IMG/VR virus record: IMGVR_UViG_3300033182_000980 | Span: 248,001-312,000 of that record | Reading direction: 5' to 3' (one strand) | Length of the DNA: 64,000 nt | Shown: positions 2,503-46,355 of the stretch, in pieces | How positions within the stretch are numbered: the stretch's first letter is position 1 | How the letters are laid out: every line of letters begins with the position of its first letter | Made by a program: the position numbers and the translations under genes | The notes under the pieces: model-generated | What the model was told of the DNA's origin: nothing | Seen by the model: the letters and a program-made list of their open reading frames with translations, nothing else | Databases searched by the model: none

Positions 2503-4887
2503 TTAACCTAAGTGAACAAATGCCTCATACAGCTCGGTTCCTGGTTCGATACCGAACTCTTGGAATACCTTTGTGACTGCGTTTCTCGCGGTGAGTTTCT
2601 TCTTTATAAAGAACTCTTCTCTTGCTTTTAGAGCCGACTGAACTTCATTCGCCCAGTTTGGTAAGATAAACTGATCGTAAGCCTCGCTCTTAACCTCGTT
2701 TAACTCTTTTGTAGGAATAGGACCGACAAGGTATCGGACACGATTATCACAGTCAGCATTACCTAGACCCTTTGGTAAGTTAGCCCCTTCGGTCAGACCA
2801 ATGTCGAGGTAGAAACGATAGCGAACAAGCTCACTAGCGATGCCACTATAGAAGCCTTTAAGTTTACCGCCACTGTTTGTGACAGTTTTATGTGCTTGAC
2901 CTGCTTTCGCAGGTACCGATTTGTAGCTTGGGTTATTGGCAATAGTAATGATGTTATTCAAAAAGTCAGACATCTTATAATCTAAACCTTTTGGTCTATA
3001 CGGAGCGATAAGATCTTCGAGGCTTTTCGTGATCTTTGCAACCTCAGCGTCAGAAGCCACCATAAGTGCGTTTACTAAACCTTTGTAAACAGAATTAGTG
3101 ACTTTGAAGAAACTTAATTTTCCTACTTCAATCTTGTGAGACTTCCCACCTGCTTTTACAGTTGTAAATCCACCGTTTAAGACGAGGGCTAACTCAAGAT
3201 ACCAACCTAGAGTTCCTTTATTGCCACCAATAAACTTTTTGACCAGAGCTTGATCCATACAGTTATCAGCAAACTCTTTGATAGCTATTATCTTTGCTTT
3301 GTCAGCAAAGACAGCAGAGTTAAAGATGTGCTTTAATCCAAGAGGCAAAAGAGGCTCTTGATGTTCTTCGATAGTGTCTTGGATCGCTCTCAAGGCTTTA
3401 GGGTCGGACTCTCTAAGAGCTAAAGACCATTCTGTATCATCGAGATACAGGTTAGCATCAAGCATCCAACTGAAACCGTCATCGGTGAACATCTTTGACA
3501 GCTTTTTCATGTGCTCTAGCGTTAGATTAACTTTAGCTAGTTCAGCGATCACTTCTCCAATTTTACCTTCTGGTAAGCTCAGACCACTTACAGCGACATT
3601 TGCCATCTGGTTGGCTTGACCCTCGATCATCTGGACAGCTTCTTCGGCCTCCACAGAGACTTCGATGTTATCAATCATCCAACCGTCATTAACAAGGTCA
3701 TACTCTGCATCGAGGCGATCAAGCTCATCGAGTTCACCCGAATGGTAGCTTCGGATAAGCTCTTCAAGCTCATCTGTGATAGGATTTCCTGTCATCTCAA
3801 GGAGTTTTCTAGCGAGAGTATTTGATTCGACACTATCATATACACCAGCAAAGAAATCTGGCTTCAAGGTGTCAGAGATCAGAGCATCATCATTACTAAT
3901 GTGGTCGGACAACAAAAGCATCTCTAGCCCTGTGAGCCACTTTAATGGTTCGTTATCCAAACTCCCGTCAGTTAAAAGACCCTCAATCTTATCAAGATCT
4001 TCTTCGCTAAGACCTTTTTCTTCTATGTATTTCTCGGTGTTGGCTTTACCGAGGTTATTCTCAATATGACCCTCGGCGGATAACTGATCGAGTCTGCTAT
4101 ATTCCTCGCCTTCAGAAGATTGACCTTCTGTTGACTCTTGTCTCAGTTTTACCCCTTTTGCGATCTCATCCATTCCTAGCTCTCTTCTTTCTTGAAGAGT
4201 TAGGTAGCGACCTTTAGATGCCATTGCACTGAATACACCTTTACGAATAGCCCCCATAACTCTCTCAGCGATAGAGCTTCCCCCTCCTACATTTTCAGTA
4301 ATTCTTTTCCAAGGGGTGACATCTGTATCTCTTACAGCATTGTCTCTTTTACCAGTCACAGCCCACATAGTGGCCCTCTGCCAAAGGTCTTCAAGGATGT
4401 CGTTACTTAGTCTCGTATACTCTCGGTTGTTATTAACAAAAGCACCATAGGTACTGTTGATGCTTTTAGTGAGAGCAGGTTTGATTTGCTCATAGAGACT
4501 GTTCAAGAAGTTTGCGTATCTTGCAACGCTTGCTTGTCGCCTTCTTCTTCTCATTCGATTCGCAAAGCTACCAACTCCACTAAGTTGGTTTAGGATCTTT
4601 GTCCCATACTCTGTGGGGGAGTCAGCACCAACATCTGGGATAGTCATTCCCTGTAGTGCTGGATCACCTGTCATCTGAGAAAGAGCGGCACTTGCCCAAT
4701 AGAAGAAGATCTTCTTAAGATCAGTGTCACTTTGTAGGTACAACCTCAGATCAGCTTGTTTTTTCATACCCGCTGATTTGATGTACTGCTCAAGCTCTCT
4801 TACAAGCTCTTGAGCAACTTTGGTCTTGGTGTGGAGGCCAGATTTCTTGATCTGATCCAGCATCTGGTTCGCCTGTTTTATGTTCAT
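2503..4887 (-). CDS. Large hypothetical protein, probable virion internal/head protein
   Basis: 794 aa; N-terminal region rich in K/R-x-A motifs (IKQAN, TKVAQ, IKSAG, KKQAD, RRQASVARYA); late motif upstream. Confidence 0.55.
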   Translation of the reverse strand: MNIKQANQMLDQIKKSGLHTKTKVAQELVRELEQYIKSAGMKKQADLRLYLQSDTDLKKIFFYWASAALSQMTGDPALQGMTIPDVGADSPTEYGTKILNQLSGVGSFANRMRRRRRQASVARYANFLNSLYEQIKPALTKSINSTYGAFVNNNREYTRLSNDILEDLWQRATMWAVTGKRDNAVRDTDVTPWKRITENVGGGSSIAERVMGAIRKGVFSAMASKGRYLTLQERRELGMDEIAKGVKLRQESTEGQSSEGEEYSRLDQLSAEGHIENNLGKANTEKYIEEKGLSEEDLDKIEGLLTDGSLDNEPLKWLTGLEMLLLSDHISNDDALISDTLKPDFFAGVYDSVESNTLARKLLEMTGNPITDELEELIRSYHSGELDELDRLDAEYDLVNDGWMIDNIEVSVEAEEAVQMIEGQANQMANVAVSGLSLPEGKIGEVIAELAKVNLTLEHMKKLSKMFTDDGFSWMLDANLYLDDTEWSLALRESDPKALRAIQDTIEEHQEPLLPLGLKHIFNSAVFADKAKIIAIKEFADNCMDQALVKKFIGGNKGTLGWYLELALVLNGGFTTVKAGGKSHKIEVGKLSFFKVTNSVYKGLVNALMVASDAEVAKITKSLEDLIAPYRPKGLDYKMSDFLNNIITIANNPSYKSVPAKAGQAHKTVTNSGGKLKGFYSGIASELVRYRFYLDIGLTEGANLPKGLGNADCDNRVRYLVGPIPTKELNEVKSEAYDQFILPNWANEVQSALKAREEFFIKKKLTARNAVTKVFQEFGIEPGTELYEAFVHLG

Positions 4888-9900: not shown

Positions 9901-12660
9901 TTAGTGTCTTAAACCAATGTCCGAGAGTGTCTTGTCAACGAGCTTGCGAACCACTTCAAGATCATCTGTCTTTTTGACCACTCGACCATTGACCTCTACG
10001 ATTAAGTTTTTGTAGTCATAGCCCGATCCACTAGACTTGAAACCACTAATAGAAATCTTAGTGTTTGGGGCTTCAATCTTGATGACCCTCTCTCCTTTTC
10101 GGTCAAGTACACCAGTGACTTTGTGTTGCCCCTTCTTGAACATCCACTGTAGCTGTTTTTCAAATCGGCTGAGATCTTGCCACCCAATGTGGTTGCTAAG
10201 TAGTCCAAACAAGCGAGCTTCCATATAGCGAGAAGCGACTCGAATGGCTGGTAAGTCAGACATAAGGTTCTCTTTGACTTGCTCCTTGTCATAGATGATG
10301 CTTGGGTTTGAGAGATACATATTCCTTAGTTTTGAGGACACAGACATCATAAAGTCTTTCATCCCTCGACCAGAGAATCCTTGATTTCTTGCGAGAGTAG
10401 GCAACAAGCTACGATCTTTTAAAATGGAACTTGGGGATCTCAACGCTTCGACTAACTCTCTTTGTTCTTCTGGAGTCAGTTCAAGAGACAGTTCTTCCAT
10501 TCGCCTTAGTTGTTCACGACTAAGTGTGCCGAGATCATGTTGAAGGTTGAAGCCTCGATTCACGAGGTTGATGAAAAACATATAGGGTAGCTTTCTGCTG
10601 TGCGTAGATAAAGCCGCCCTAAATGATTTATGCTCTCTAGCTATCTCCACGAGAACTTCAATAACACCTAGTTTGTCGAGTGTAAGAAGTGCGTCTTTCC
10701 ATGTCTTGGACTTAAAGATATGGAGTAATTCTCGGTAGACACGATCTGGACTCTGATCCTTTAACTTGTGCTTGTTTCTCTTGATCGCTTGGGCTGTATC
10801 TTTGGGGATAGTCAGACCATATTTGACCACAAACTTAACTGCACGAATGATGCGTGTAGGATCTTTCGATAAGGTCTTATCAGCATCTAGGAAACACCTT
10901 GCTTCACCTGCTTCTAAATCCCTAATGCCGCATCCTGTCATGTCGATGATTTCTGCTTTATCTGGACCATCAGCTAAGTCAGATAGTCTCCACATAAGCA
11001 TATTAAATGTGTAGTCTCTGTTTGTTAGGGAGGTGTAGAGATTTGATCCTTCTAACTTCTCTTCTTCGGGGTATTCCTCAACATCTCTAATCTCGATAGC
11101 CGCATCACCATCTTTTGAGAACTCGCTAAGATCAACACCGTCTACGATCCACTCGGAGTTTACCCAAATGTGTGTGCCATACCAGTCAGTCATCACATGG
11201 GTCTGTGCGGGGATCATGTCTACAAGGTTATTAGCAACCCACTCGGCATCCCTTCCTAGATTTTCAGCGTCTACTACAACATCTACATCTTTCACAGGCA
11301 CATCAATCATAAAGTTGCGAATCGCACCACCTGCGACATAAATGTTTTCTGCCACTCCCCGACCCATAGATTTAGTTGCCCTTGAGAGCCACTTCATAAG
11401 GGCAGTTGAGTGAGCGTTTGAGACAGCTAGTTTCTTTCTTCTGGCCATTTTAGAAATCCTTCTCTTGATTAGATTTGGGTCATTTATGATTGATGGATCA
11501 GAGACATACATCTCTCTTAGTTGATCCATTTTGCGAGACATAAAATCTCTCATGTTCGACTTTCCGACACCCTTATGTCTAGCAAGGGTGGGGAGGAAAG
11601 ATTTGTCTTTAATTGCACCACCAGGAGACTTTATGTATTTAACAAGATCTCTCTGTTCCTCGTCCGTTAAGGCGAAGGCTTTTTCCTCTAGCCTAGCGAT
11701 CTGATTTCGATCTAAGACCGACAGGTCATGTCGAAGGGAGATACCTAAGTTGAGCATCCTAATGAAGAACCTATAGGGTAGCTTCTTCGCTTCTGTACTT
11801 AGTGCCGCTCTGAAGCTAGGTTCTTCTTCGGCTATGTCGGCAAGCACCTCAATCAGACCTAACTCTTCAAAGGTATCTAAAACGCTCTCCCATGTTCTCT
11901 CGGATAGGATGCCTCTAATCTCACCATAGATGCGGTTCGGGGGGACTTTGGTTAGAGCGTATCTCGTCTTTAGGATAGCCCTCTTAGTCTCATTAGGGAT
12001 GTTCAGACCATATTTGACTAGGAACTTAACAGCCCTAAGAATACGAGTAGGGTCATCATAGAATGTTTTTTCGGGGTCTAGTGGACACCTTGCTTCGCCT
12101 GCTTCTAAGTCAGCTAATCCACAGCCTGTCATATCTACGATTTCTGCTTGGTCTGGACCATCCGCTAAGTCAGCTAACCTCCACATAAGAGTGTTGAAGG
12201 TAAAGTCTCTACGATAGATGTCCTCTCGAATAGTGGATTTGGTGATCGAGGGTTTGTACCCACCCCCTGTGTCATCAGAGTAAGTCTCTGATCTAGCGTC
12301 CACGATCTCAATCGCCGCATCACCTTCTGCACTAAACTCACTAAGATCAAGACCGTCTACTATCCATTCAGACTTAACGAAGATCTTAGCTACACCATAC
12401 TGATCGCTCACAGTTTCAGTTCGAGCAGGAATCATGTCTGCCAGCTCGTCAGCGAGCCAAGCCGAGTTCTCCCCAAGAGCTATGGAGTCAAGCACAAGGT
12501 CTACATCTTTAACTGGCTTATTGAGCTTAAAGTTGCGTATAGCTCCACCTACTACATAAGTGTTTTCAGCAACATCTCTACCTAGTCTCTTGGTGGATCT
12601 TGAGAGCCACTTCATTAGAGCTACCGAGTGTTCATTAGATACCATTGCTGACTTAATCAT
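9901..12660 (-). CDS. Tandem-duplicated class II tRNA nucleotidyltransferase (CCA/poly(A) polymerase family), two catalytic units plus small C-terminal domain
   Basis: Two copies of GGAIRN...KDVD and DPTRI(L/I)RAVKF; unit 1 EDIYRRDFTFN, unit 2 TSLTNRDYTFN. Start moved to ATG 12660 (MIKSAM), which overlaps the upstream gene's end. Confidence 0.85.
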   Translation of the reverse strand: MIKSAMVSNEHSVALMKWLSRSTKRLGRDVAENTYVVGGAIRNFKLNKPVKDVDLVLDSIALGENSAWLADELADMIPARTETVSDQYGVAKIFVKSEWIVDGLDLSEFSAEGDAAIEIVDARSETYSDDTGGGYKPSITKSTIREDIYRRDFTFNTLMWRLADLADGPDQAEIVDMTGCGLADLEAGEARCPLDPEKTFYDDPTRILRAVKFLVKYGLNIPNETKRAILKTRYALTKVPPNRIYGEIRGILSERTWESVLDTFEELGLIEVLADIAEEEPSFRAALSTEAKKLPYRFFIRMLNLGISLRHDLSVLDRNQIARLEEKAFALTDEEQRDLVKYIKSPGGAIKDKSFLPTLARHKGVGKSNMRDFMSRKMDQLREMYVSDPSIINDPNLIKRRISKMARRKKLAVSNAHSTALMKWLSRATKSMGRGVAENIYVAGGAIRNFMIDVPVKDVDVVVDAENLGRDAEWVANNLVDMIPAQTHVMTDWYGTHIWVNSEWIVDGVDLSEFSKDGDAAIEIRDVEEYPEEEKLEGSNLYTSLTNRDYTFNMLMWRLSDLADGPDKAEIIDMTGCGIRDLEAGEARCFLDADKTLSKDPTRIIRAVKFVVKYGLTIPKDTAQAIKRNKHKLKDQSPDRVYRELLHIFKSKTWKDALLTLDKLGVIEVLVEIAREHKSFRAALSTHSRKLPYMFFINLVNRGFNLQHDLGTLSREQLRRMEELSLELTPEEQRELVEALRSPSSILKDRSLLPTLARNQGFSGRGMKDFMMSVSSKLRNMYLSNPSIIYDKEQVKENLMSDLPAIRVASRYMEARLFGLLSNHIGWQDLSRFEKQLQWMFKKGQHKVTGVLDRKGERVIKIEAPNTKISISGFKSSGSGYDYKNLIVEVNGRVVKKTDDLEVVRKLVDKTLSDIGLRH

Positions 12661-13228
12661 CTGACTTAACCTCTTCTGGTTCGGGTGTGGTTTCGACACC
12701 AAGTGATTTCTTAACCTTTGCTTTGAACATCTTGATAACGAACGCATTTAAAGCACCCGCACTCGCACCCATATAGACATCAATCATCATAAATGGCTTT
12801 GATAAGGTGACTGCAATACCCGCTCCTGTTAAAACAGCAACAAGTCGGATCACAGCGTCAGCCTTCTCTTTACAGGTTTTGAAGATGAAGGGCTTAATGA
12901 TCTGAGTGATCGCTAGGCTCAAGATAGCGGCGTTGACTACAAGATACACATGACCCATAAAGACATCATGTGTTTCACGACCTTCAGCTTTCCAAGGAAT
13001 ATACTCCATATACTGTGTGCAGGCTACACCCTCTTCGTATATTTTACATTCTTGGTTTTCTTCACCACATAGAAGATCATTACCCTCTATGATTTCGCAC
13101 AGCCTCGGTTCAGACTCCCCATCTTTATTCATGGTTTGACAGAGGATTGTATGAACATCAACAAACTGACAATGGTCTGGTAATGCGTGTAGTGGCTCTG
13201 CACTTATAGGTATGTTATGTTTAGCCAT
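12653..13228 (-). CDS. Membrane protein, holin-like C-terminal part
   Basis: Cys-rich N-terminus followed by about three hydrophobic segments and a charged tail; late motif upstream. Confidence 0.4.
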   Translation of the reverse strand: MAKHNIPISAEPLHALPDHCQFVDVHTILCQTMNKDGESEPRLCEIIEGNDLLCGEENQECKIYEEGVACTQYMEYIPWKAEGRETHDVFMGHVYLVVNAAILSLAITQIIKPFIFKTCKEKADAVIRLVAVLTGAGIAVTLSKPFMMIDVYMGASAGALNAFVIKMFKAKVKKSLGVETTPEPEEVKSDD

Positions 13229-13278: not shown

Positions 13279-13620
13279 TTAAGTGATAGAGATGCTATGG
13301 CTACTAGACTTAAACCTTCGAGCTAAAGAGTCCCACACCCTCAATGCGGACTCGCTCGTCTTACCCTCATAGAGATAGTCTGGTATAAACTGAAAGGGTT
13401 GCCCCTTGCTTTCAACCTTACCCTCTTTGACCACCTCAAGGTATAACCGAGTACCAATCCCTCGCCCTCTGTATTGGTCTTTAAGCTCACTTTCAAGCAA
13501 GACGAGGGTTTGGGTATTGGGTAAGTAAACAGCGTGAGCAAAACCTACCTCTACGCCCTTATCGAGAGCAAGGATATAGAACCGATCTCTTGTATCTGGC
13601 TCACGCTTAAAAGAAATCAC
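13279..13620 (-). CDS. GNAT-fold acetyltransferase-like protein (paralogue 3)
   Basis: YRGRGIGTRLY acetyl-CoA-binding motif A; shared FIPDY...TSESALRVW. Confidence 0.65.
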   Translation of the reverse strand: MISFKREPDTRDRFYILALDKGVEVGFAHAVYLPNTQTLVLLESELKDQYRGRGIGTRLYLEVVKEGKVESKGQPFQFIPDYLYEGKTSESALRVWDSLARRFKSSSHSISIT

Positions 13621-14705: not shown

Positions 14706-15089
14706 ATGGATATTATGGGTGCTGGAGTAATGCTTTTATGCAATAACAAAACGCTAATACTTAAAAGAGCGAACTACAAACATGATCGCTTTTCAGGCTA
14801 TTGGAACTTTCCTGGTGGTCAAGGAGAGCCAAACGAAACGACTTATCAGACAGCCCTAAGAGAGACTGAAGAAGAGACAGGTATCAAACCCGATCAATAT
14901 AAAGTAGTAGACCATGTAGACGACAAGATTTACACGATGTATGTCGGGGTGTGTAAGGAAGAGATCGTGCCTGTCCTAGATCACGAGCATACAGAGTGGG
15001 AGTGGGTTGTCATCTCTAAGATCCCTAGCATGACTCGTGAGATGCACCCCAAGGATTGGCGAGGGTTCAAGAAGTATTATCGGCTTTAG
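14706..15089 (+). CDS. Nudix hydrolase
   Basis: Nudix box PGGQGEPNETTYQTALRETEEETG. Confidence 0.92.
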   Translation: MDIMGAGVMLLCNNKTLILKRANYKHDRFSGYWNFPGGQGEPNETTYQTALRETEEETGIKPDQYKVVDHVDDKIYTMYVGVCKEEIVPVLDHEHTEWEWVVISKIPSMTREMHPKDWRGFKKYYRL

Positions 15090-15092
15090 AAA

Positions 15093-16175
15093 TCACCACA
15101 CTTGGAAGTGAACCCCTAAAGACCAAGTGTTTGAACCGTCAGCACCGATAACCCAACCAAGACCTGGAGCTATGTTGAGGCTCTTACCCATAATGTAAGG
15201 ATGCCATGTACCCATCACCCCTAGATACTGATTGGACTCGGTTAGAGCAAAGTTAGCTCCTAAGCGATAATCGCCCTTAGCAAAGTTGATAAAGCTACCC
15301 CCAATAGACAACCCAAACTCACCACCTTGAAAGGTTGACCCTACAAGTAAGCTCGGCTCGAACATTCTAAGACCAAGACGAACCGAAGTTGCTGGTGTCG
15401 TTGGGATGTAGACGAGTTGTGAATCGAGGTTAGGGTCGCCTGCCATGAGGATACTTTCAAGACCCTCTAGGGGTACAAACTTCCCTTGCTCATCAGTGTA
15501 CCCTCCATATATGTGAATACCTTGGTTTTGAACAGCTCCAGAACCCAAACTATCACCCTCACCATAAGTGATAGCAACAACCTTAAATGCGAGGTTGAAG
15601 TCTATGTGGTTGTCTAGTTCAGCCCAAAGATTTCTACTCCGAAAGGTATATGCTGGCCTACCATTAAAACTAAAAGGAGATCGCCAACTAAACTCAAATG
15701 GCTCACATCTTTCGGGGTGGTCGGAACACCTGTGCCTATCCTCCCTAGAAACACCAGGCCAACTCTGAGGTGGTGCAGGTGTTGGTTCTCTGCCACTTCT
15801 AAGGGATGAGATACCTCTGTTAAGTTTGCCCTCCATACGAACAAATCTTTGACTGATAGCTCTTATCTCTGCACCTGTCTCGGATTTGAAATCGCTTATG
15901 GCTTGCTGTGTTCTTTGGTCAAGACCGCTGATGATCGCATTCGCTCTTTGTTCAAGAGTGACTCGGTCAACCATATGAGACTGAACTGTACCTAGAGTGG
16001 TTTCAATCGCAGAAATCTTCTGTGCGTTCTCGGACAAGATGCCCTTCATTTGATTTTGGATCGTATCGTTCATTCTTTGCATCTTGTAGACAGACCAAGC
16101 GTTGCCTCCTACAGAAATCAAGAACAGGCTCAAGAGTGCGTAAGCTCCATATTTGATGTTCGCCAACTCAATCAT
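15093..16175 (-). CDS. Membrane-anchored coiled-coil protein with C-terminal beta-barrel-like region (spanin-like candidate)
   Basis: N-terminal TM segment (YALLSLFLISVGGNAW), coiled coil, amphipathic beta strands ending SLGVHFQVW. Confidence 0.45.
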   Translation of the reverse strand: MIELANIKYGAYALLSLFLISVGGNAWSVYKMQRMNDTIQNQMKGILSENAQKISAIETTLGTVQSHMVDRVTLEQRANAIISGLDQRTQQAISDFKSETGAEIRAISQRFVRMEGKLNRGISSLRSGREPTPAPPQSWPGVSREDRHRCSDHPERCEPFEFSWRSPFSFNGRPAYTFRSRNLWAELDNHIDFNLAFKVVAITYGEGDSLGSGAVQNQGIHIYGGYTDEQGKFVPLEGLESILMAGDPNLDSQLVYIPTTPATSVRLGLRMFEPSLLVGSTFQGGEFGLSIGGSFINFAKGDYRLGANFALTESNQYLGVMGTWHPYIMGKSLNIAPGLGWVIGADGSNTWSLGVHFQVW

Positions 16176-16254
16176 AGTAAATCTCCTTTCTTTGTTAGGA
16201 GATACTATACCATGACCGAGCTAGTCCACCTTCTTCTTAATCTGATCCGATCTC

Positions 16255-16446
16255 CTATTCTTTATCTTCTACAACTACGATCTCTCGTGTCGTCTTACCT
16301 GTGCTGTAGTCGATGTTCTCACGAACCCGAAAGACAGGTGGTGGTTCGGGTTGTGGTGGTCGGCTGTAGTAGCGAACTTCATTTTTCCACTGACCTCCGA
16401 CTTCGACCCACACTCGCTCTCCATTTTCCATTCGCTTGTAAGGCAT
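16255..16446 (-). CDS. Small hypothetical protein
   Basis: AAGGAG RBS before ATG; 63 aa. Confidence 0.5.
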   Translation of the reverse strand: MPYKRMENGERVWVEVGGQWKNEVRYYSRPPQPEPPPVFRVRENIDYSTGKTTREIVVVEDKE

Positions 16447-16461
16447 TGTATTTCTCCTTTG

Positions 16462-16692
16462 TTAAAGTGTTTTGATAACTTCCCACCAACCTGGTCCACA
16501 TTGTTCGGTACGCTGTAGGACTAAGGTTTGTGAGCCTAGAGGCTCAAGAAAGTCTCTGTGTGTTTTGTCGTATCCATCGCCCCCTTTGGACTTTAAGAGA
16601 GCGTCTGCTGAACAGACAAGCATCTCGTTAAGTCCAAAGTATTGAGCACCGAACAGACCACATTGATCGACATCTGTGTAGACCATCATCAC
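16462..16692 (-). CDS. Small hypothetical protein
   Basis: Co-oriented and tightly packed with neighbours; G-rich RBS-like sequence upstream. Confidence 0.45.
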   Translation of the reverse strand: MMMVYTDVDQCGLFGAQYFGLNEMLVCSADALLKSKGGDGYDKTHRDFLEPLGSQTLVLQRTEQCGPGWWEVIKTL

Positions 16693-16702
16693 CCACCCCC
16701 CT

Positions 16703-17098
16703 TTACTTCTGAAGCATTGAGAGGGGCAACTGCTGGATCACTTGGAAGATACACTCGTTAAAGTGTTCGACCACAAACTCGGTATCGTTGCGACTTGATG
16801 CTGAGGGTTGGATGATGACCACGACATCTCCGTCAGAGAGGCTGACATTGCCACCGACACACTCAGATTTGGTGAGTCCTTGAGCGAGGGCGACAGTGGA
16901 CTCATGTCGGGGGTTGATTGCGTTCTCGAACGCAATGTTCGAGGCACTTTCTGCAAGGGCAACGAGTGCCTTTGCGTCCTCGACAGAGATACTGCTCTTG
17001 TGTACAAGAGCGTTGGTGTCTGTCAGCATACGATTGCTGAAGGCACTTGAGAGGACGACACGGGTGGTAGGTGCTTTGAGGATGTTTGCGATAGTCAT
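16703..17098 (-). CDS. DUF1874/STIV B116/AcrIII-1-like protein (divergent)
   Basis: VVLSSAFSNRML...ISVEDAKAL...NAINPRHESTVALA...VSLSDGDVVVIIQ parallels the DUF1874 pattern as recalled (LLNAFSLNML...ISLEEAK...SAIGHxxTA...IKLxxGDxxxVxQ). Start at 17098 with AAAGGAG RBS. Confidence 0.55.
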   Translation of the reverse strand: MTIANILKAPTTRVVLSSAFSNRMLTDTNALVHKSSISVEDAKALVALAESASNIAFENAINPRHESTVALAQGLTKSECVGGNVSLSDGDVVVIIQPSASSRNDTEFVVEHFNECIFQVIQQLPLSMLQK

Positions 17099-17139
17099 AT
17101 TAGGTTCTCCTTTCAAGAGATTGAGTTGATGACATTGGT

Positions 17140-17228
17140 TATATGATTAAGGGGTTACAGGGGGCGAGGGTTGCTCACTCACAGTGAGGATTGCTCCTCG
17201 GTACACAATCTTATAGATAAGGGGTTAC
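17140..17228 (-). promoter_or_regulatory. Two tandem putative early promoters (GTAACCCCTTATCTATA at 17212-17228; GTAACCCCTTAATCATATA at 17140-17158)
   Basis: The same motif recurs at 30886, 31118 and 31764, each time upstream of small accessory genes. Confidence 0.65.
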
Positions 17229-17241
17229 GCTTTGCCCTTTC

Positions 17242-17250
17242 TCATATAAT
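17242..17250 (+). promoter_or_regulatory. Putative middle promoter element TCATATAAT
   Basis: The same element lies upstream of other replication/nuclease genes (28215, 34873, 45165, 49205). Confidence 0.5.
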
Positions 17251-17287: not shown

Positions 17288-20020
17288 ATGTTTGCCGATA
17301 TGCTTGAGACATTAAGACGACCCGATATAAAGCCCAAGCTGTGGATGAAAGATTGCGAGCTGATCTTGGGTACGAAAGAAAACCTAGATCAGTGCATTGA
17401 TGAGTGTATCAACAGCGTTGCGTATGGGATTGACCTTGAGACAACAGGTCTTGATAATCGTGTGTTCAATGGACGCACACGAGATACGATTGTAGGGGTC
17501 TGCTTGTCAGCCCATAAGGATAAGGGGTACTACTTCCCTGTCGGTCATCAAGAGGGTGTAGAACATAACATCCCTTGGAGGTTGATGTATCCAGCTCTTG
17601 AGCGTCTGTTTGATCTCTCTGTGAAAGCAGAGCCTGTCTTTCACAACGCCGCTTTCGACCAAGAGTTCTTGGAGTTCAACGAGTACAAGTCGGGTCTTGG
17701 TGAGGAGCGTTGGGATTCGTTCAAGTGGCATGACACCTATATCATCCAGTATCTCTTGAACCCTCGTGAAAAGGGAGGTCGAGGACTCAAGCATTTAACG
17801 AATGTTCACCTTGAGCGTGAGATGATTGAGCTGTCTGATCTCATGCCCGATGCCCCCGACAAAAACTACTCTAAGCTCGATGTGAGCTGGGAGCCTTGTG
17901 TTTGGTATGCCGCTAGTGATGCGATGTGTACGCTTGGTCTTTGGGAAATCCTTTATAAGAAGTACACCGAGGCTAAAGAGCATACGCTCTCTATGTATGT
18001 GTTAGAGCGTATGTGTCTGCTCTCAACCCGATGGATGCACAGAAATCGTGTCTACATTGATCGGGACACAGCGTTAAAGTACAGCCAGCAAGGTCAGAAG
18101 TTATGGTTTGACTCTCTGATTGATGTCTATGACGGAGCAAAAGAAATCTTAGGTCGAGACATTACCCCTAACTATGTTCGAGTCCTTAAAGGCGAGTTGA
18201 AGGGCGAGAACAAGTTTAACCACATGGAAGTGGAGGGGATGAGCTATAAGACTCGTGTAGACGAAGCTCGTAAGGAAGCGACTCGTTTATATCCCGATGA
18301 AAAGGGAGTAGTCACTAAGGCTGTGAAGATCATCGGTAAGAGTGCAGGTACAGAGGAGATTGAGTTTCCTTTGACCTATGACATCTTATCCCCTCAAAAG
18401 CTCGGCTTGTTGTTTAGAGAGTTGAGTGTACCAGGTCTTAAGGCGAGTGAAAAGTCGGGGCAAGTCGTAACCTCTAAAGACATTCTTGAAGAGGTCATTG
18501 AGAAGGCATCTGATGACTTTCCATTCATGGCTAAGGTTAAGACCTTTCGTGAGCTTGGAAAGGCTATGGGTCAATACCTCATTCCCTTTGTAGAGGATGT
18601 CGGACAAGACGGTACTCTCAAGCCCAAGTTTGATCAGTTTGCCGCTGACACAGGACGCTTTTCATGTAAGACAAACAGCAAGCCTTGGAAGGTCAAAGAC
18701 GGTGGGTGTCGTGTACCATTTCAAGGTATACCAGCTACCTACGATCCGACTAAGCCCGAAGCTGTGGCTAAGATGCGTTCTTGCGTGGCAGTGCGTGATG
18801 ATGATTGGTGGTTAGCGGCCATTGACTATGCAGGTGTAGAGCTTCGGTTAGTCACAAACTTGAGTCTTGAGCCTAAGTGGATTAAGGCTTTCTTTGAGTG
18901 TTCCGAGTGTGGCACATCTTACCCACAAGAAATCCAAGAGGATGGGTTCGCCAAAGCACCTCCGTCTAACTGTACGAACTGTGGCTCTGATAAGATTGGC
19001 GACTTGCACACGATTACAGCGGTGGCGTTTTATGGTGAGAGTGCTAAGAAGCGTGATGATTGGAAGGCGTTGAGAGGTAATGGTAAGGGTTGCAACTTTG
19101 CTCTGTCTTACGGTGGTACAGGTAAGGCTGTTCAGCGTACCATTGGTTGTTCAGCCGAAGAAGCAGAGGAGAAGTTCAAGAAGTTCACCTCGACTTATAG
19201 TGAGCTGACGAAGTGGTGGTCTAAGCAACACAACTTTGGTCGTAAACATGGTTATGTCAAGACAGGTATGGGTCGTGTTCAGCCATTGCCCGACATCAAC
19301 TCTGATGATTTTAGGTTCAAATCCAAAGATGAGCGTAAGGCTGTTAATGGGCCAGTACAGGGTACGAGTGCAGATGTAACCAAGTTGGCGATGAGCTTCA
19401 TCTACCAAGAGACTAAGAAGCGTGGGTGGCAAGACAAGCTGATGATGATCTTGACCGTCCATGACGAAATCGTCTTTGAGATCCATAAGTCGATCTTGAA
19501 AGAGGCGATTGATATGATCTCCGAGATGATGACTCGCAACAAGGTGATTAAGCGTCTAGGTTGGCGTGTGCCTTTGCTTGTAGATGTTGAGCTTGGTAAG
19601 GATTGGACTGTTCCTTTTGATGTGAAAGATGTAATCGCAGGAGAAGCTGGCGACAAGATCATCAATGCCAAGTACAAGTGCAAGGATTGTGAGGAAAAGA
19701 CACCTCGTGATCCTAAGCCTACGGTTTGTATGCACTGTGGCTCTAGCAACATTAAGTGTGATTACACAGATGAGTTTATTGCCAAGATCAAGAAGCAGAC
19801 CGAACAGCTTTATGCAGACTATGGGGTGAATCCCGATGAGATTGTTAAAGAGGAAGAGGTACCCAATAAGGTTGAGGAAGCTCCCCCAAGCAAGCCTACT
19901 TTCATGCTAGAGTCTTTGACCGAAGATACTGCTAAAGAGCTTGCTGATTGGATTAAAAATCAAGATGGTGAGTATGATGTAGTATATCAAGGTCGTAGTA
20001 TAAATGCTTTACTAGATTGA
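17288..20020 (+). CDS. polA: Family A DNA polymerase with 3'-5' exonuclease domain
   Basis: Exo motifs IDLETTG, FHNAAFD, YAASDA; polymerase motifs AIDYAGVELR (A), RGNGKGCNFALSYGG (B), VHDEI (C); AGGAGGT RBS. Confidence 0.95.
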   Translation: MFADMLETLRRPDIKPKLWMKDCELILGTKENLDQCIDECINSVAYGIDLETTGLDNRVFNGRTRDTIVGVCLSAHKDKGYYFPVGHQEGVEHNIPWRLMYPALERLFDLSVKAEPVFHNAAFDQEFLEFNEYKSGLGEERWDSFKWHDTYIIQYLLNPREKGGRGLKHLTNVHLEREMIELSDLMPDAPDKNYSKLDVSWEPCVWYAASDAMCTLGLWEILYKKYTEAKEHTLSMYVLERMCLLSTRWMHRNRVYIDRDTALKYSQQGQKLWFDSLIDVYDGAKEILGRDITPNYVRVLKGELKGENKFNHMEVEGMSYKTRVDEARKEATRLYPDEKGVVTKAVKIIGKSAGTEEIEFPLTYDILSPQKLGLLFRELSVPGLKASEKSGQVVTSKDILEEVIEKASDDFPFMAKVKTFRELGKAMGQYLIPFVEDVGQDGTLKPKFDQFAADTGRFSCKTNSKPWKVKDGGCRVPFQGIPATYDPTKPEAVAKMRSCVAVRDDDWWLAAIDYAGVELRLVTNLSLEPKWIKAFFECSECGTSYPQEIQEDGFAKAPPSNCTNCGSDKIGDLHTITAVAFYGESAKKRDDWKALRGNGKGCNFALSYGGTGKAVQRTIGCSAEEAEEKFKKFTSTYSELTKWWSKQHNFGRKHGYVKTGMGRVQPLPDINSDDFRFKSKDERKAVNGPVQGTSADVTKLAMSFIYQETKKRGWQDKLMMILTVHDEIVFEIHKSILKEAIDMISEMMTRNKVIKRLGWRVPLLVDVELGKDWTVPFDVKDVIAGEAGDKIINAKYKCKDCEEKTPRDPKPTVCMHCGSSNIKCDYTDEFIAKIKKQTEQLYADYGVNPDEIVKEEEVPNKVEEAPPSKPTFMLESLTEDTAKELADWIKNQDGEYDVVYQGRSINALLD

Positions 20021-20028
20021 GGTTAAAT

Positions 20029-21255
20029 ATGTTTTTTGAGTATGAAAAAAAGAAGTACAACGGAATAGACGATTACACTTGGGTGAGTGGAGGTAAATTA
20101 TTCACACCTGCCCATGAGCTGTCCGAGATCAAATCAAAGTTTACAAGATATGAGATCATACTCAAAATCTGTCAGGTGATATATGACCACCAAATACCAT
20201 TCCCCTATAAAGAGCACAGCGTATCTAAAGCTAAAGGTGAGTTATCTAAGCTCTTTAATACACATTTCCCTGCTGATGAAAGAGAATGGTATTCAGACTT
20301 ATGCGAAGGCATCAAGTGCTTTAAATATAGGGGGGGCTATCTGCGGATAAAGACCAACCACACAGGCACTTATGTCTCTGACCTATTTTGTCATCGTACT
20401 CGATTAAAGGCACAAAAGAAAAGGTACGCTGATGATCGTCTAGGAATGGTAGGTCTTTGGGAGTATCTTTTATCTTACAGGTGCGAGGAGGAGTCTGATA
20501 TAAATACGGTCATGTATATGTTTATCAATGGTATCTTTCACTTTAGCGATAAGATTGACCATACAGCGGTTTACACTTCGGGGAGATTATCTATTGGTAC
20601 TGTAAGTCAATTTAAACCCGCTAGTGCTAAGGCTCTGTACGATTTATTTGGAGCTAAGAATGTACTCGACTTTTGTGCTGGATGGGGGGATAGGCTAGTA
20701 GGATTTCATGCATCCAATGCCGAAACATATATCGGAATTGACCCTAACTCTGATTTGCACCCTCAATATGAAAAGATACATGAGTTTTGTGGCACTGGAA
20801 AAGAAGCAAAGTTCATCTGTTTGCCCGCAGAAGATGTAGATTATTCAGAACTCCGATATGACTTTGTTTTCACATCTCCACCATACTTTGATCTGGAAAT
20901 ATACAATGGAGAAGAGACTCAATCCGTGAAAAGATACCCTAAGATCGACCATTGGTTAAAGGGGTTCTTGTTCAAATCTTTGAGTAAGATTTATGAGTAT
21001 CTAGAAGATGGTGGTAGAATAGCGGTCAATATATCAGACAGTCCAGCAGTGAACATTTTTGTTTGTGAGTCTATGCTAGAGCACATGGAGTCGATAGGTG
21101 CTACTTATGAGGGTACTATAGGTTATGGCCTTGCTCGTAGACCTACCGAGAGTGGGCATAATTATTTAAAAGAAAAGTCTGAGCCTATTTTTATTTGGTC
21201 TAAGGGTGTTGCTCCCGATCCAAATCGACAAACAGATAATTTTTTTGGAGTCTAG
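20029..21255 (+). CDS. DNA amino-methyltransferase (N4-C/N6-A type), paralogue 1
   Basis: LDFCAGWGDR (motif I), YIGIDPN, FTSPPYF (motif IV); start at MFFEYE. Confidence 0.85.
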   Translation: MFFEYEKKKYNGIDDYTWVSGGKLFTPAHELSEIKSKFTRYEIILKICQVIYDHQIPFPYKEHSVSKAKGELSKLFNTHFPADEREWYSDLCEGIKCFKYRGGYLRIKTNHTGTYVSDLFCHRTRLKAQKKRYADDRLGMVGLWEYLLSYRCEEESDINTVMYMFINGIFHFSDKIDHTAVYTSGRLSIGTVSQFKPASAKALYDLFGAKNVLDFCAGWGDRLVGFHASNAETYIGIDPNSDLHPQYEKIHEFCGTGKEAKFICLPAEDVDYSELRYDFVFTSPPYFDLEIYNGEETQSVKRYPKIDHWLKGFLFKSLSKIYEYLEDGGRIAVNISDSPAVNIFVCESMLEHMESIGATYEGTIGYGLARRPTESGHNYLKEKSEPIFIWSKGVAPDPNRQTDNFFGV

Positions 21256-30885: not shown

Positions 30886-30902
30886 GATAGATAAGGGGAT
30901 AC
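30886..30902 (-). promoter_or_regulatory. Putative early promoter (GTATCCCCTTATCTATC)
   Basis: Variant of GTAACCCCTTATCTATA. Confidence 0.55.
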
Positions 30903-30906
30903 AACC

Positions 30907-31140
30907 ATGTATTATGTTCAGAACAAGACCACAGGACAGCCACTCTATTACACGCATAAAGGCAAGGTAGAGAAGGTCTACTCGCTACGCATCGTGGCAG
31001 AAATCGAAGCCGAGAAAGCTGACCAAGCGAACCACTTAAAGACAGCCCGGATTGATGTCGTTGAGCTATCCAAGTCAGCTCGCCTATATATGGAGAACCA
31101 AGCGAGAATGTGTGGCTGTAACCCCTTATCTATACCCTAG
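30907..31140 (+). CDS. Small hypothetical protein
   Basis: AAGGGG RBS-like sequence; 77 aa. Confidence 0.45.
   Translation: MYYVQNKTTGQPLYYTHKGKVEKVYSLRIVAEIEAEKADQANHLKTARIDVVELSKSARLYMENQARMCGCNPLSIP
31118..31134 (+). promoter_or_regulatory. Putative early promoter (GTAACCCCTTATCTATA)
   Basis: Exact copy of the 17212-17228 motif. Confidence 0.65.
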
Positions 31141-31763: not shown

Positions 31764-31780
31764 GTAACCCCTTACCTATA
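31764..31780 (+). promoter_or_regulatory. Putative early promoter (GTAACCCCTTACCTATA)
   Basis: One mismatch to consensus; followed by hairpin GTGAGGA-ACGA-TCCTCAC. Confidence 0.65.
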
Positions 31781-46354: not shown

Positions 46355-46355
46355 A

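What the first reader, a model, noticed from the sequence alone, without database searches (positions are those of the whole stretch)
16703..17228. Divergent AcrIII-1 (DUF1874)-like gene directly behind two tandem putative early promoters
Seen: the DUF1874-like motif order (SAFSxxML, ISVEDAK, AI...H-xx-T, L-xx-GD-xxxxx-Q), but NPRH replaces the GH motif, the Arg normally preceding the LxxGD strand is missing, and an SRNDTE segment follows. Established: AcrIII-1 is a dimeric ring nuclease that degrades cyclic tetra-adenylate using a conserved His. Inference: an anti-type III CRISPR or anti-signalling protein, perhaps with changed ligand specificity or acting as a sponge.
Basis: partly seen in the sequence, partly recalled or inferred. 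Interest (0 to 1): 0.68.

Follow-up and report, generated by a model that had tools for sequence, protein, structure and literature searches.

The report
Divergent AcrIII-1-like ring nuclease gene
A 375-kb uncultured marine jumbo phage carries a small, conserved gene whose protein has the fold, predicted dimer and key histidine of the viral anti-CRISPR enzyme AcrIII-1. It belongs to a rare, unannotated branch in which two of the four known catalytic residues are replaced, so it probably destroys a host alarm nucleotide in a modified way.

Summary
It sits behind two tandem copies of a phage-specific promoter-like motif that point at the gene.

- **Database annotation:** Pfam, PHROGs and NCBIfam do not recognise the protein.
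- **Homology:** a profile of 51 relatives aligns to DUF1874 proteins at 98.6% probability (E 6e-15).
- **Fold:** a pLDDT-90.6 model matches only DUF1874 structures. These are STIV B116 (Z 13.2), Csx1-Crn2 (Z 12.4) and AFV3-109 (Z 10.4); the next hit scores 2.9.
- **Dimer:** a homodimer is predicted with the N-terminal motif at the interface.
- **Clade:** the gene belongs to a rare "NPRH" clade, with 23 clusters among 1.84 billion representatives. All were found in viral or metagenomic DNA and none in 185,579 prokaryote genomes.
- **Residues kept:** the catalytic His (H65), a lid-loop Arg (R103) and a lid-loop Glu (E107) are invariant.
- **Residues lost:** the Asn and Arg that hold the scissile phosphate in AcrIII-1/Crn2 are Ser and Gly here. 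New arginines (R23, R64) appear instead.

The most likely function is a dimeric cyclic-oligoadenylate phosphodiesterase used against host signalling immunity. Ligand, activity, host and expression timing are all untested. I rate it a new variant of a known kind, of moderate interest.

The parts
16703..17098 (-). Coding sequence of the 131-aa DUF1874-fold (AcrIII-1/Crn2-like) protein, NPRH clade (P0001)
   Evidence: ORF and translation. 69 homologues at 52-93% identity. AF2 model with pLDDT 90.6. Fold matches 2j85 at Z 13.2, 8y7g at Z 12.4 and 2j6c at Z 10.4. hhalign against DUF1874 gives 96-98.6% probability.
17104..17113 (-). Ribosome-binding site (AAAGGAGAAC on the gene's strand), 5 nt before ATG 17098
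   Evidence: Read from the sequence. The same CTCTTGAAAGGAGAAC leader recurs before many genes that follow the promoter motif and in relatives.
17138..17159 (-). Proximal promoter-like element, TGTAACCCCTTAATCATATAAC. It joins the upstream half of motif P1 to the core of motif P3 (WTCATATAA) and starts 60 nt before the ATG.
   Evidence: It is conserved at -59 to -61 in relatives L004-L011, even where the upstream neighbour differs.
17203..17228 (-). Distal promoter-like element, the canonical P1 motif GTAACCCCTTATCTATAAGATTGTGT, 130 nt before the ATG
   Evidence: It is present only in the closest relatives (L004, L005).
17186..17199 (-). Short hairpin (GAGGA-gcaa-TCCTC) just downstream of the distal element
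   Evidence: RNAfold of the leader. Similar hairpins follow about 40% of P1 sites, against 19% of random 40-mers. This is a weak feature.
15093..16692 (-). Three co-oriented downstream genes: 75/76 aa at 16462-16692, 63 aa at 16255-16446 and 360 aa at 15093-16175. They are probably co-transcribed with the gene.
   Evidence: ORFs. No P1, P2 or P3 motif lies between them. No Pfam or PHROG hit. The order 130-75-63-...-362 aa is conserved in related phages. Co-transcription is inferred.

Best explanation
The gene encodes a homodimeric, metal-independent cyclic-oligoadenylate phosphodiesterase (ring nuclease) of the DUF1874 / AcrIII-1 / Crn2 fold.

Proposed mechanism (inferred):
- Two subunits pair through strand 28-36. 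This brings the two LSSAFSNRML motifs and the two NPRHEST motifs together into one ligand pocket on the dimer axis.
- A mobile loop (residues 98-108) closes over the ligand.
- H65 acts as general acid, as H47 does in AcrIII-1. E107 positions it, as E88 does. R103 locks the lid, as R85 does.
- The phosphate-holding Asn and Arg of canonical enzymes (N8, R66) are absent. Their role is probably taken by R64, next to the His, and/or by R23.

The phage transcribes the gene from two phage-specific promoters. It would use the enzyme to destroy a host immune second messenger, most likely the cA4 made by type III CRISPR-Cas.

Shown here: fold, homology, predicted dimer, residue conservation, and promoter motif and orientation. 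Inferred: ligand, catalysis, arginine relocation, biological target and timing.
For: **Fold**
- The model has pLDDT 90.6.
- Its only strong PDB matches are DUF1874 structures: 2j85 (Z 13.2, rmsd 2.0 over 108 residues; Foldseek E 8e-7, TM 0.71/0.80), 6scf AcrIII-1 (E 2.6e-6), 8y7g Csx1-Crn2 (Z 12.4) and 2j6c (Z 10.4). The next hit scores Z 2.9.
- BFVD and the ESM Atlas agree.

**Sequence homology**
- The profile's best PDB hit is B116, at E 0.062.
- hhalign gives 79% against two DUF1874 sequences, 96.1% (E 2e-9) against 13, and 98.6% (E 6e-15) with 51 NPRH-clade sequences against 14.

**Dimer**
- Complex prediction scored 0.82, and the best of 3 controls scored 0.00.
- That mark was reached by 20 of 30 proteins solved as pairs of one chain and by 1 of 23 solved as single chains. 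These counts hold only roughly, because my own alignment was used.
- The runs agree in 100% of contacts and the partner pLDDT is at least 88.
- The interface is residues 19-23, 25, 28-36, 95, 97 and 119-131.
- Like complexes are already solved, so the pass shows likeness, not that this copy binds.

**Active site**
- N59, H65, P98, R103 and E107 are invariant in all 51 sequences, down to 23% identity.
- S18 and F20 are invariant wherever the N-terminus is present. S67 is kept in 47 and T68 in 50 of 51.
- These map onto ligand and catalytic residues of gp29 (S11, H47, S49, T50, Q81, R85; paper 10.1101/778746) and onto E88/E536 (PMC11317161).
- Every sequence keeps at least one of R23 and R64: 33 have both, 14 have only R64, 4 have only R23, and none lacks both.

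**Viral setting**
- All members lie on phage or small-ORF metagenomic contigs.
Against: - Two of the four residues whose mutation cripples Crn2 are replaced: N451=N8 by S18 and R514=R66 by G82. Catalysis or specificity may therefore differ.
- The register of the lid-loop alignment is uncertain by about 2 residues. R103=R85 and E107=E88 are probable, not shown.
- The R23/R64 pattern is not statistically significant. About 0.9 sequences lacking both would be expected by chance, and the sequences are related to each other.
- No Pfam, PHROG or NCBIfam model recognises the protein.
- The host is unknown, so the presence of type III CRISPR or any cA4 signalling is unknown.
- The gene is a conserved, syntenic core gene next to the DNA polymerase across the lineage. 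That is unlike many patchily distributed anti-CRISPRs.
- In its native virus, the SIRV2 homologue gp37 did not act as an anti-CRISPR, because it is expressed middle/late (10.1101/2023.01.10.523387).
Confidence: 0.55

Rival explanations
1. Same fold and chemistry but a different ligand. The rewired pocket (N8->S, N13->R, R66->G, the NPR insertion and a longer lid loop) would adapt the enzyme to another cyclic nucleotide signal, such as cA3, cA6 or a CBASS-type oligonucleotide. It would then be an anti-signalling enzyme but not an anti-cA4 one.
For: The substitutions fall on residues that contact cA4 in gp29 and Crn2. The clade is sharply separated from canonical DUF1874: only one canonical protein reached E<=1e-3 in the exhaustive search. 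No member lies next to type III CRISPR genes.
Against: Every characterised DUF1874 protein is cA4-specific. The 2-fold symmetric dimer pocket suits an even-numbered ring. S21, S67, T68 and Q97, the equivalents of the cA4-binding S11, S49, T50 and Q81, are retained.
Confidence: 0.2
2. A catalytically weak or dead 'sponge' that sequesters the cyclic nucleotide in the closed dimer without turning it over.
For: Both scissile-phosphate stabilisers are lost (S18, G82). In Crn2, the N451A and R514A mutants had markedly diminished ring nuclease activity. Phage sponges for cyclic nucleotides are known (mentioned).
Against: A pure binder has no need for an invariant His-Glu pair. H65 and E107 are 51/51 conserved across sequences as low as 23% identical. 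Arginines adjacent to the His are also maintained.
Confidence: 0.08
3. A role unrelated to immune signalling. Examples are binding and inhibiting a host protein, as SIRV2 gp37 does with a lysine methyltransferase, or a housekeeping RNA or nucleotide phosphodiesterase of the replication module.
For: The gene is a conserved core gene beside the DNA polymerase with fixed synteny. Neighbours include a Nudix hydrolase and a 948-aa CCA-adding/poly(A) polymerase-like enzyme.
Against: The most conserved positions are those of the nucleotide pocket and lid, not a surface patch. gp37 itself still degrades cA4.
Confidence: 0.12
4. The repeated GTAACCCCTTA... elements are not promoters but terminators, RNA-processing sites or protein-binding repeats, so the gene is not promoter-proximal.
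For: No transcript data exist. No phage RNA polymerase or sigma region 2 was detected. A subset of sites is followed by hairpins.
Against: The orientation bias is 32:4 in one-directional gene runs. Only one of the 71 sites lies between convergent genes. The sites sit a fixed 40-80 nt before start codons, followed by a ribosome-binding site. The position is conserved in relatives. No T-tract follows the hairpins.
Confidence: 0.1

Closest known systems
AcrIII-1 (SIRV1 gp29, PDB 6SCF/2X4I) and STIV B116 (PDB 2J85), Pfam PF08960 STIV_B116-like/DUF1874
   Same: - Size is similar (131 aa here, 114-116 aa there) and the fold is the same (Z 13.2, TM 0.71/0.80).
- The homodimer forms through the strand after motif I.
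- The motif order matches: xAFSxxML, then His-x-Ser-Thr, then the GD strand ending in Gln, then a lid loop with Arg and Glu.
- The catalytic His is invariant.
- The protein is virus-encoded.
   Different: - There is no PF08960 hit at all, while the controls hit at 72-101 bits.
- GH becomes NPRH, a 2-residue insertion with Arg in place of Gly.
- N8 becomes Ser, N13 becomes Arg, and the 'NR' pair (R66) becomes 'GGF/GGN'.
- The lid loop is PSASSRNDTEF instead of ISQRLEEGK.
- An extra N-terminal 12 residues and a C-terminal helix are present.
- The host is presumably bacterial and marine, not a crenarchaeon.
Crn2 domain of Csx1-Crn2 (Marinitoga, PDB 8Y7F/8Y7G)
   Same: The fold matches (Z 12.4 over 118 residues). 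The His (H495) and the lid Glu (E536) have equivalents in H65 and E107.
   Different: Crn2 is fused to a CRISPR effector and is encoded in a type III locus. Its N451 and R514, which are needed for activity, are Ser and Gly here. No cellular or CRISPR-linked copy of the NPRH clade was found.
AFV3-109 (PDB 2J6B/2J6C), crenarchaeal virus protein called a viral homologue of Crn2
   Same: The core fold is the same (Z 10.4).
   Different: It is more distant than B116, and its function is also untested.
Bacteriophage and ICE DUF1874 proteins (for example B. subtilis YddF and Thermoanaerobacterium phage THSA-485A)
   Same: These are bacterial-virus members of the same fold. THSA-485A is BFVD hit 3. 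YddF cleaves cA4.
   Different: They keep the canonical NAFSINML, GH, NR and GPRLxEG motifs. The present clade does not.

Membership tests
Pfam PF08960 (STIV_B116-like / DUF1874) | Scores above the curated gathering threshold (26 bits) of the family HMM | tested here: not met
   No hit even at E<=10 for P0001. None for 33 close relatives or 20 wider clade members. None in a six-frame scan of the whole phage. Positive controls gp29, B116 and P0092 score 72-101 bits.
DUF1874 / AcrIII-1 / Crn2 superfamily (remote homology) | Significant profile-profile similarity to bona fide members | tested here: met
   hhalign gives 96.1% (E 2e-9) and 98.2-98.6% (E 3e-14 to 6e-15). The best PDB profile hit is B116. 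One canonical PF08960 protein was reached by the exhaustive profile search at E 9.8e-4.
DUF1874 / AcrIII-1 / Crn2 superfamily | The distinctive DUF1874 fold | tested here: met
   Z 13.2, 12.4 and 10.4 to 2j85, 8y7g and 2j6c; the next chain scores 2.9. Foldseek E values of 8e-7 to 7e-4 go only to DUF1874 entries. The Atlas top cluster is 98% PF08960.
AcrIII-1 / Crn2 ring nucleases | Homodimer whose interface forms the ligand site | tested here: met
   In silico only. Complex prediction scored 0.82 against a best control of 0.00. The mark was reached by 20/30 solved homo-pairs and 1/23 single chains. The interface includes motif I residues 19-25. The pass may reflect memory of solved AcrIII-1 dimers.
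AcrIII-1 / Crn2 ring nucleases | Absolutely conserved catalytic His (H47 of gp29, H495 of Crn2) followed by Ser-Thr | tested here: met
   H65 is 51/51, S67 47/51 and T68 50/51. They align to H47, S49 and T50 in every alignment.
AcrIII-1 / Crn2 ring nucleases | Mobile lid loop with Arg (R85) and Glu (E88/E536) | tested here: inconclusive
   R103 and E107 are 51/51 invariant and lie in the loop after the Gln-ending strand.
AcrIII-1 / Crn2 ring nucleases | Scissile-phosphate stabilisers Asn (N8/N451) and Arg (R66/R514) | tested here: not met
   N8 aligns to S18 (48/48) and R66 aligns to G82 (50/51). The N451 and R514 equivalence was checked, and their importance comes.
AcrIII-1 / Crn2 ring nucleases | Binds cA4 and cleaves it to A2>P | not testable with these tools
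   This needs biochemistry. cA4 is not among the ligands offered by the complex predictor.
Anti-CRISPR (functional class) | Expressed early enough and able to protect the phage from type III CRISPR in its host | not testable with these tools
   The host is unknown. No RNA runs hold the locus. The SIRV2 precedent shows that timing matters.
Phage-specific promoter (motif P1) | Over-represented, intergenic, strand-oriented toward the downstream gene, at a fixed distance, and conserved in relatives | tested here: met
   5 matches in the window against 0.7 expected. 71 in the genome. 32:4 orientation. 40-80 nt to the start codon. Conserved at -59 to -61 in L004-L011. The transcription start itself was not tested.

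The most novel reading that the evidence does not exclude
The NPRH clade would be a distinct enzyme class built on the DUF1874 scaffold. Its relocated arginines (R64 and/or R23 instead of R66) and longer lid would give it a different substrate. That substrate could be another cyclic oligoadenylate, or a non-CRISPR immune signal such as a CBASS-type oligonucleotide. On this reading, marine jumbo phages carry as a core gene a previously unrecognised anti-signalling nuclease with a new specificity.
Probability: 0.2. Interest if true: 0.75.

Novelty: new variant of a known kind. Interest (0 to 1): 0.55.

Why it matters
AcrIII-1 is the prototype viral enzyme that disarms cyclic-nucleotide immunity. 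HMM-based surveys found it in only 36 of 28,114 phage genomes.

This work shows a whole branch of the fold that those HMMs cannot see. The branch is conserved as a core gene in an abundant lineage of uncultured marine, estuarine and wetland jumbo phages of about 350-376 kb.

It also provides a natural experiment on the active site. His and Glu are kept, while the phosphate-binding Asn and Arg are replaced and new arginines appear. That can test how ring nucleases achieve catalysis and specificity.

If the protein is active on cA4, it implies that type III CRISPR (or other cA4 signalling) is a significant pressure on these phages and helps to narrow their unknown host. If it is active on another signal, it widens the known repertoire of anti-signalling enzymes.

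Tried and rejected
**Direct family scans**
- Pfam, PHROGs and NCBIfam gave nothing meaningful.
- Weak hits to ZapC_N (E 0.056), phrog_5063 (E 0.012), a ubiquitin-like domain (1v5o) and calexcitin are scattered, below threshold and contradicted by the fold. I rejected them as chance.

**Cultured-phage searches**
- tblastn and megablast against 50,697 phage records found no relative of the gene or the locus.
- The DNA polymerase's only good hit is an uncultured 485-kb phage at 45% identity, so no cultured relative or host could be named.

**Transcription machinery**
- The search for what reads the promoters found no T7-like RNAP (PF00940), no RNAP beta or beta-prime core domains (PF00562, PF00623) and no sigma70 region 2.
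- Only sigma70 region-4-like HTH ORFs turned up.
- A resemblance of the motif to T3/T7-class promoters is from memory only and found no support.

**Expression**
- No RNA run holds the locus.

**Host and cellular counterparts**
- The clade signature Nx[VI]NPRH[ET]ST encodes no relative in 185,579 prokaryote genomes. A first attempt with a too-diverse alignment failed.
- The phage carries no CRISPR array.
- Look-ups of five distant members gave only short contigs of small unannotated ORFs. Cluster look-up gave no names.

**Statistics and coordinates**
- R23/R64 complementarity is suggestive but not significant.
- Model coordinates are not exposed, so distances from R23 and R64 to the catalytic site could not be measured.
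Full report
**1. What is there**

The window is bases 248,001-312,000 of a 375,691-bp IMG/VR virus record that CheckV rates as complete. The record has 44.9% GC, nine tRNAs and no CRISPR array.

The finding's coordinates cover a minus-strand ORF. The mechanical ORF list starts it at TTG 17116. Homologues begin at ATG 17098, and AAAGGAGAAC lies 5 nt upstream, so the gene is 16703-17098 and encodes 131 aa. It is present once in the genome.

**2. Is it a real, conserved gene?**

Yes. The word-indexed search found 69 proteins at 52-93% identity. Several lie on contigs of 347-376 kb.

A 33-sequence alignment has 29 invariant columns. They are concentrated in four blocks: residues 16-23, 59-68, 91-108 and 113-122.

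Synteny is conserved in relatives. The order is: divergent family-A DNA polymerase, then zero to two small inserted genes, this gene, a 75-aa gene, a 63-aa gene, up to two variable small genes, a ~362-aa gene, and in the closest relatives a Nudix gene on the other strand.

DNA holders are wetland, seawater, estuary and marine metagenomes.

**3. Is it DUF1874/AcrIII-1-like?**

Direct family scans say nothing:
- Pfam gave no PF08960 hit at E<=10.
- PHROGs and NCBIfam were blank.
- A six-frame scan of the phage with PF08960 was blank.
- The same model scores SIRV1 gp29, STIV B116 and a metagenomic DUF1874 protein at 72-101 bits.

Three independent lines nevertheless establish the relationship.

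- **(a) Profiles.**
  - The family profile's best hit in the PDB is STIV B116 (E 0.062). The alignment pairs LSSAFSNRML with LTNAFSINML and NAINPRHEST with NAIG--HDST.
  - hhalign gives 79% against gp29+B116.
  - It gives 96.1% (E 2e-9) against 13 viral DUF1874 proteins fetched from IMG/VR.
  - It gives 98.2-98.6% (E 3e-14 to 6e-15) when the query is widened to 51 clade members.
- **(b) Structure.**
  - The AlphaFold2 model has pLDDT 90.6 and pTM 0.86.
  - Foldseek finds only DUF1874 entries at E<=1e-3: 2j85, 6scf, 2x4i, 8y7f/g and 2j6b.
  - The Foldseek-independent aligner gives Z 13.2, 12.4, 12.3 and 10.4 for these, and 2.9 for the next chain.
  - BFVD returns rudivirus, STIV and Thermoanaerobacterium phage THSA-485A proteins. 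The ESM Atlas's best cluster is 98% PF08960.
- **(c) Quaternary structure.**
  - A homodimer prediction scored 0.82, with the best of three controls at 0.00.
  - The mark was reached by 20 of 30 proteins solved as pairs of one chain and by 1 of 23 solved as single chains. These counts hold only roughly, because my own alignment was used.
  - The runs agree in 100% of contacts and the partner pLDDT is at least 88.
  - The interface comprises strand 28-36, motif-I residues 19-25, residues 95 and 97, and the C-terminal hairpin.
  - AcrIII-1 dimers are already solved, so this shows likeness rather than independent proof.

**4. A separate clade**

The exhaustive profile search of 1.84 billion cluster representatives found only 23 proteins at E<=1e-3.
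- Twenty of them share the signature SS(T/A)FS...NxxNP(R)H(E)ST...GGF...P...R..xE...CQF, at 23-48% identity to the query.
- The weakest hit is a canonical PF08960 protein.
- One hit (P0070) is a chimera.

None of the 20 clade members hits PF08960 at E<=1. The members whose contigs could be read lie among small unannotated ORFs on marine metagenomic contigs, with no cas genes nearby. In IMG/VR only the jumbo-phage lineage carries the clade. The clade signature encodes no relative in 185,579 prokaryote genomes.

I call this the NPRH clade.

**5. Active-site comparison**

The AcrIII-1 paper lists the cA4 contacts of gp29 (10.1101/778746):
- H47, the general acid; the H47A mutant is more than 2500-fold slower.
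- R85 on the mobile loop 82-94.
- Side chains N8, S11, N13, S49, T50, R66 and Q81.

The Csx1-Crn2 paper shows that N451A, H495A, R514A and E536A all markedly reduce ring-nuclease activity. N451 and R514 hold the scissile phosphate, and E536 (=E88) positions the His (PMC11317161). A gp29/Crn2 alignment confirms N451=N8, H495=H47, R514=R66 and E536=E88.

| gp29 residue | Residue here | Conservation in the 51-sequence alignment |
|---|---|---|
| N8 | S18 | 48/48 |
| S11 | S21 | not stated |
| N13 | R23 | 37/48 |
| H47 | H65 | 51/51 |
| S49 | S67 | 47/51 |
| T50 | T68 | 50/51 |
| R66 | G82 | 50/51 |
| Q81 | Q97 | Q in 32/51 |
| R85 (lid loop) | R103 (probable) | 51/51 |
| E88 (lid loop) | E107 (probable) | 51/51 |

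The mapping comes and the counts. The loop register is uncertain by about 2 residues.

So the His-Glu pair and the lid Arg are kept, while both scissile-phosphate stabilisers are gone.

The clade has two new arginines. One is R64, immediately before the His, in the position of the canonical Gly after a two-residue N-P insertion. The other is R23. Every sequence has at least one of them: 33 have both, 14 have only R64, 4 have only R23, and none lacks both. This fits a relocated phosphate-binding arginine. It is not statistically significant, because about 0.9 'neither' cases would be expected by chance and the sequences are phylogenetically related.

**6. The promoters**

The 11-mer TAAGGGGTTAC occurs at 17148 and 17218 on the plus strand. 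There are three more copies in the window, making 5 where 0.7 are expected, and no shuffle reached 5. The genome holds 71 copies with at most one mismatch.

Read on the other strand, the consensus is TGTAACCCCTTATCTATAnCCTAGTGT.

Evidence on orientation and placement:
- In one-directional gene runs the element lies in this sense orientation 32 times and in the opposite orientation 4 times.
- Only one site lies between convergent genes.
- The element starts typically 40-80 nt before a start codon and is followed by a CTCTTGAAAGGAGA-type leader.
- It precedes mostly small ORFs and is dense at 334-362 kb of the genome.

The proximal copy starts 60 nt before the ATG. It is conserved at -59 to -61 in eight related loci, including three where the upstream neighbour is a same-strand gene. 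The distal copy is found only in the closest relatives.

The genome has at least two further upstream motif classes:
- TAGTTT[ACT]TTTAT: 32 sites, of which 29 lie within 150 nt of a same-strand start.
- WTCATATAA: 42 sites, of which 32 lie near starts.

The proximal element of this gene is a hybrid, GTAACCCCTTA followed by ATCATATAAC. The DNA polymerase has a TCATATAAT at 17242-17250.

Which polymerase or factor reads these motifs is unknown. No T7-like or multisubunit RNAP domain and no sigma region 2 was detected. Only sigma region-4-like HTH ORFs were found. 'Early' is plausible from the association with clustered small ORFs but is untested, since no RNA data exist.

**7. Interpretation**

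The best-supported reading (0.55) is a homodimeric ring nuclease. It would bind a cyclic oligoadenylate, most likely cA4, in the dimer cleft and cleave it by His-mediated general-acid catalysis under a closing lid. A differently placed arginine would do the work of R66. The phage would use it against cOA-dependent immunity.

Rivals:

| Rival | Probability |
|---|---|
| Same chemistry, different ligand | 0.20 |
| Non-catalytic sponge | 0.08 |
| A function outside signalling | 0.12 |

The last rival is suggested by the gene's core, replication-adjacent position. It also has a precedent in SIRV2 gp37, which in its native virus is expressed middle/late, is not an effective anti-CRISPR, and inhibits a host lysine methyltransferase. 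The invariant His-Glu pair argues against a pure sponge or a pure protein-binding role.

**8. Membership and novelty**

The protein is a member of the DUF1874 fold superfamily by profile-profile and structural criteria. It fails the Pfam family threshold, and it lacks two of the four residues shown by mutagenesis to matter in Crn2.

I therefore file it as a new variant of a known kind, not simply a new member. It is an unannotated, virus-only clade with a rewired active site, conserved as a core gene in an uncultured jumbo-phage lineage.

HMM-based surveys found AcrIII-1 in 36 of 28,114 phage genomes. Such surveys would probably miss this clade, because PF08960 does not detect any member.

**9. 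Limits**

- No ligand, activity, host or transcript evidence could be obtained.

Noticed in passing
Whole genome G000. In the window: 30892-30902, 31118-31128, 31764-31774, and also 17148-17158 and 17218-17228: About 66 copies of a strongly conserved promoter-like motif, TGTAACCCCTTATCTATAnCCTAGTGT in the sense orientation. They lie 40-80 nt upstream of mostly small ORFs and cluster densely at 334-362 kb of the genome. About 40% are followed by a short GC-rich hairpin, against 19% of random 40-mers. The transcription machinery that reads them was not identified.
   Followed up: partly
Window sites near 2498 (-), 9900 (-) and 26765 (+); 32 sites genome-wide: A second upstream motif class, TTTRTAGTTT[AC]TTTAT. 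It lies about 45-63 nt before same-strand start codons, often of larger genes, and is frequently followed by a TTAACCCTTAAC-like leader. It may mark a different temporal class.
   Followed up: partly
Window sites near 17147 (-), 36967 (-), 45174 (-) and 49214 (-); TCATATAAT at 17242-17250 (+) before the DNA polymerase: A third upstream motif class, WTCATATAA, which resembles a -10 element. It lies about 30-50 nt before start codons of replication genes (helicase, DNA polymerase) and in the tRNA region. There are 42 sites, 32 of them near starts.
   Followed up: partly
Window 15093-16692 (-): Three genes downstream of the DUF1874-like gene (75/76 aa, 63 aa, 360 aa) have no family hit but keep conserved synteny in relatives. 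The 360-aa protein has an N-terminal hydrophobic segment and a Gly/aromatic-rich C-terminal region ending in ...HFQVW, which is reminiscent of a membrane beta-barrel.
   Followed up: no
Window 14706-15089 (+), 13279-13620 (-), 9901-12747 (-): A Nudix hydrolase (PF00293, E 1e-18), a short GNAT-like acetyltransferase and a 948-aa protein with two poly(A) polymerase/CCA-adding head domains lie just beyond the cassette. The Nudix gene keeps its position in the closest relatives.
   Followed up: no
Window 20017-21255 (+), 45188-46480 (-), 46356-47570 (-): Three paralogous methyltransferase-like genes of 404-430 aa, all hitting phrog_12517 and phrog_498; the 20017-21255 copy also hits the Pfam N6_N4_Mtase family. 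Two of them overlap as called.
   Followed up: no
Protein P0070 (NCBI MBP46815.1, MAG Myxococcales): A 118-aa protein whose N-terminal part is thioesterase-like (PF03061). Its last 48 residues are nearly identical to the C-terminus of this phage protein. It is most likely a chimeric assembly or gene call rather than a bacterial homologue.
   Followed up: no
Outside the window: G000:C1 27316-27432 (+), 42584-42736 (-), 147137-147226 (-): ORFs of 147-218 aa with sigma70 region-4-like HTH domains (PF08281, best E 3e-8). No sigma region 2, T7-like RNAP or RNAP beta/beta-prime domains were detected. These ORFs are candidate readers of the phage promoter motifs.
   Followed up: no
L012 and L013, about 3790-4000 (relatives on 290-kb and 81-kb contigs): In a more distant phage the 49%-identical homologue is not preceded by the GTAACCCC motif. 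It is preceded instead by two inverted ~30-nt copies of a different element (...ATCCCAAGTGGGGAACTAGCTCATTA), which suggests a lineage-specific divergent promoter pair.
   Followed up: no
Outside the window: G000:C1 173376-180001: A cluster of nine tRNA genes (Arg x2, Gly, Asn, Tyr, Glu, Lys, Leu, Met) interspersed with the WTCATATAA motif. The first ~100 bases of the record recur about 410 bp from its end.
   Followed up: no
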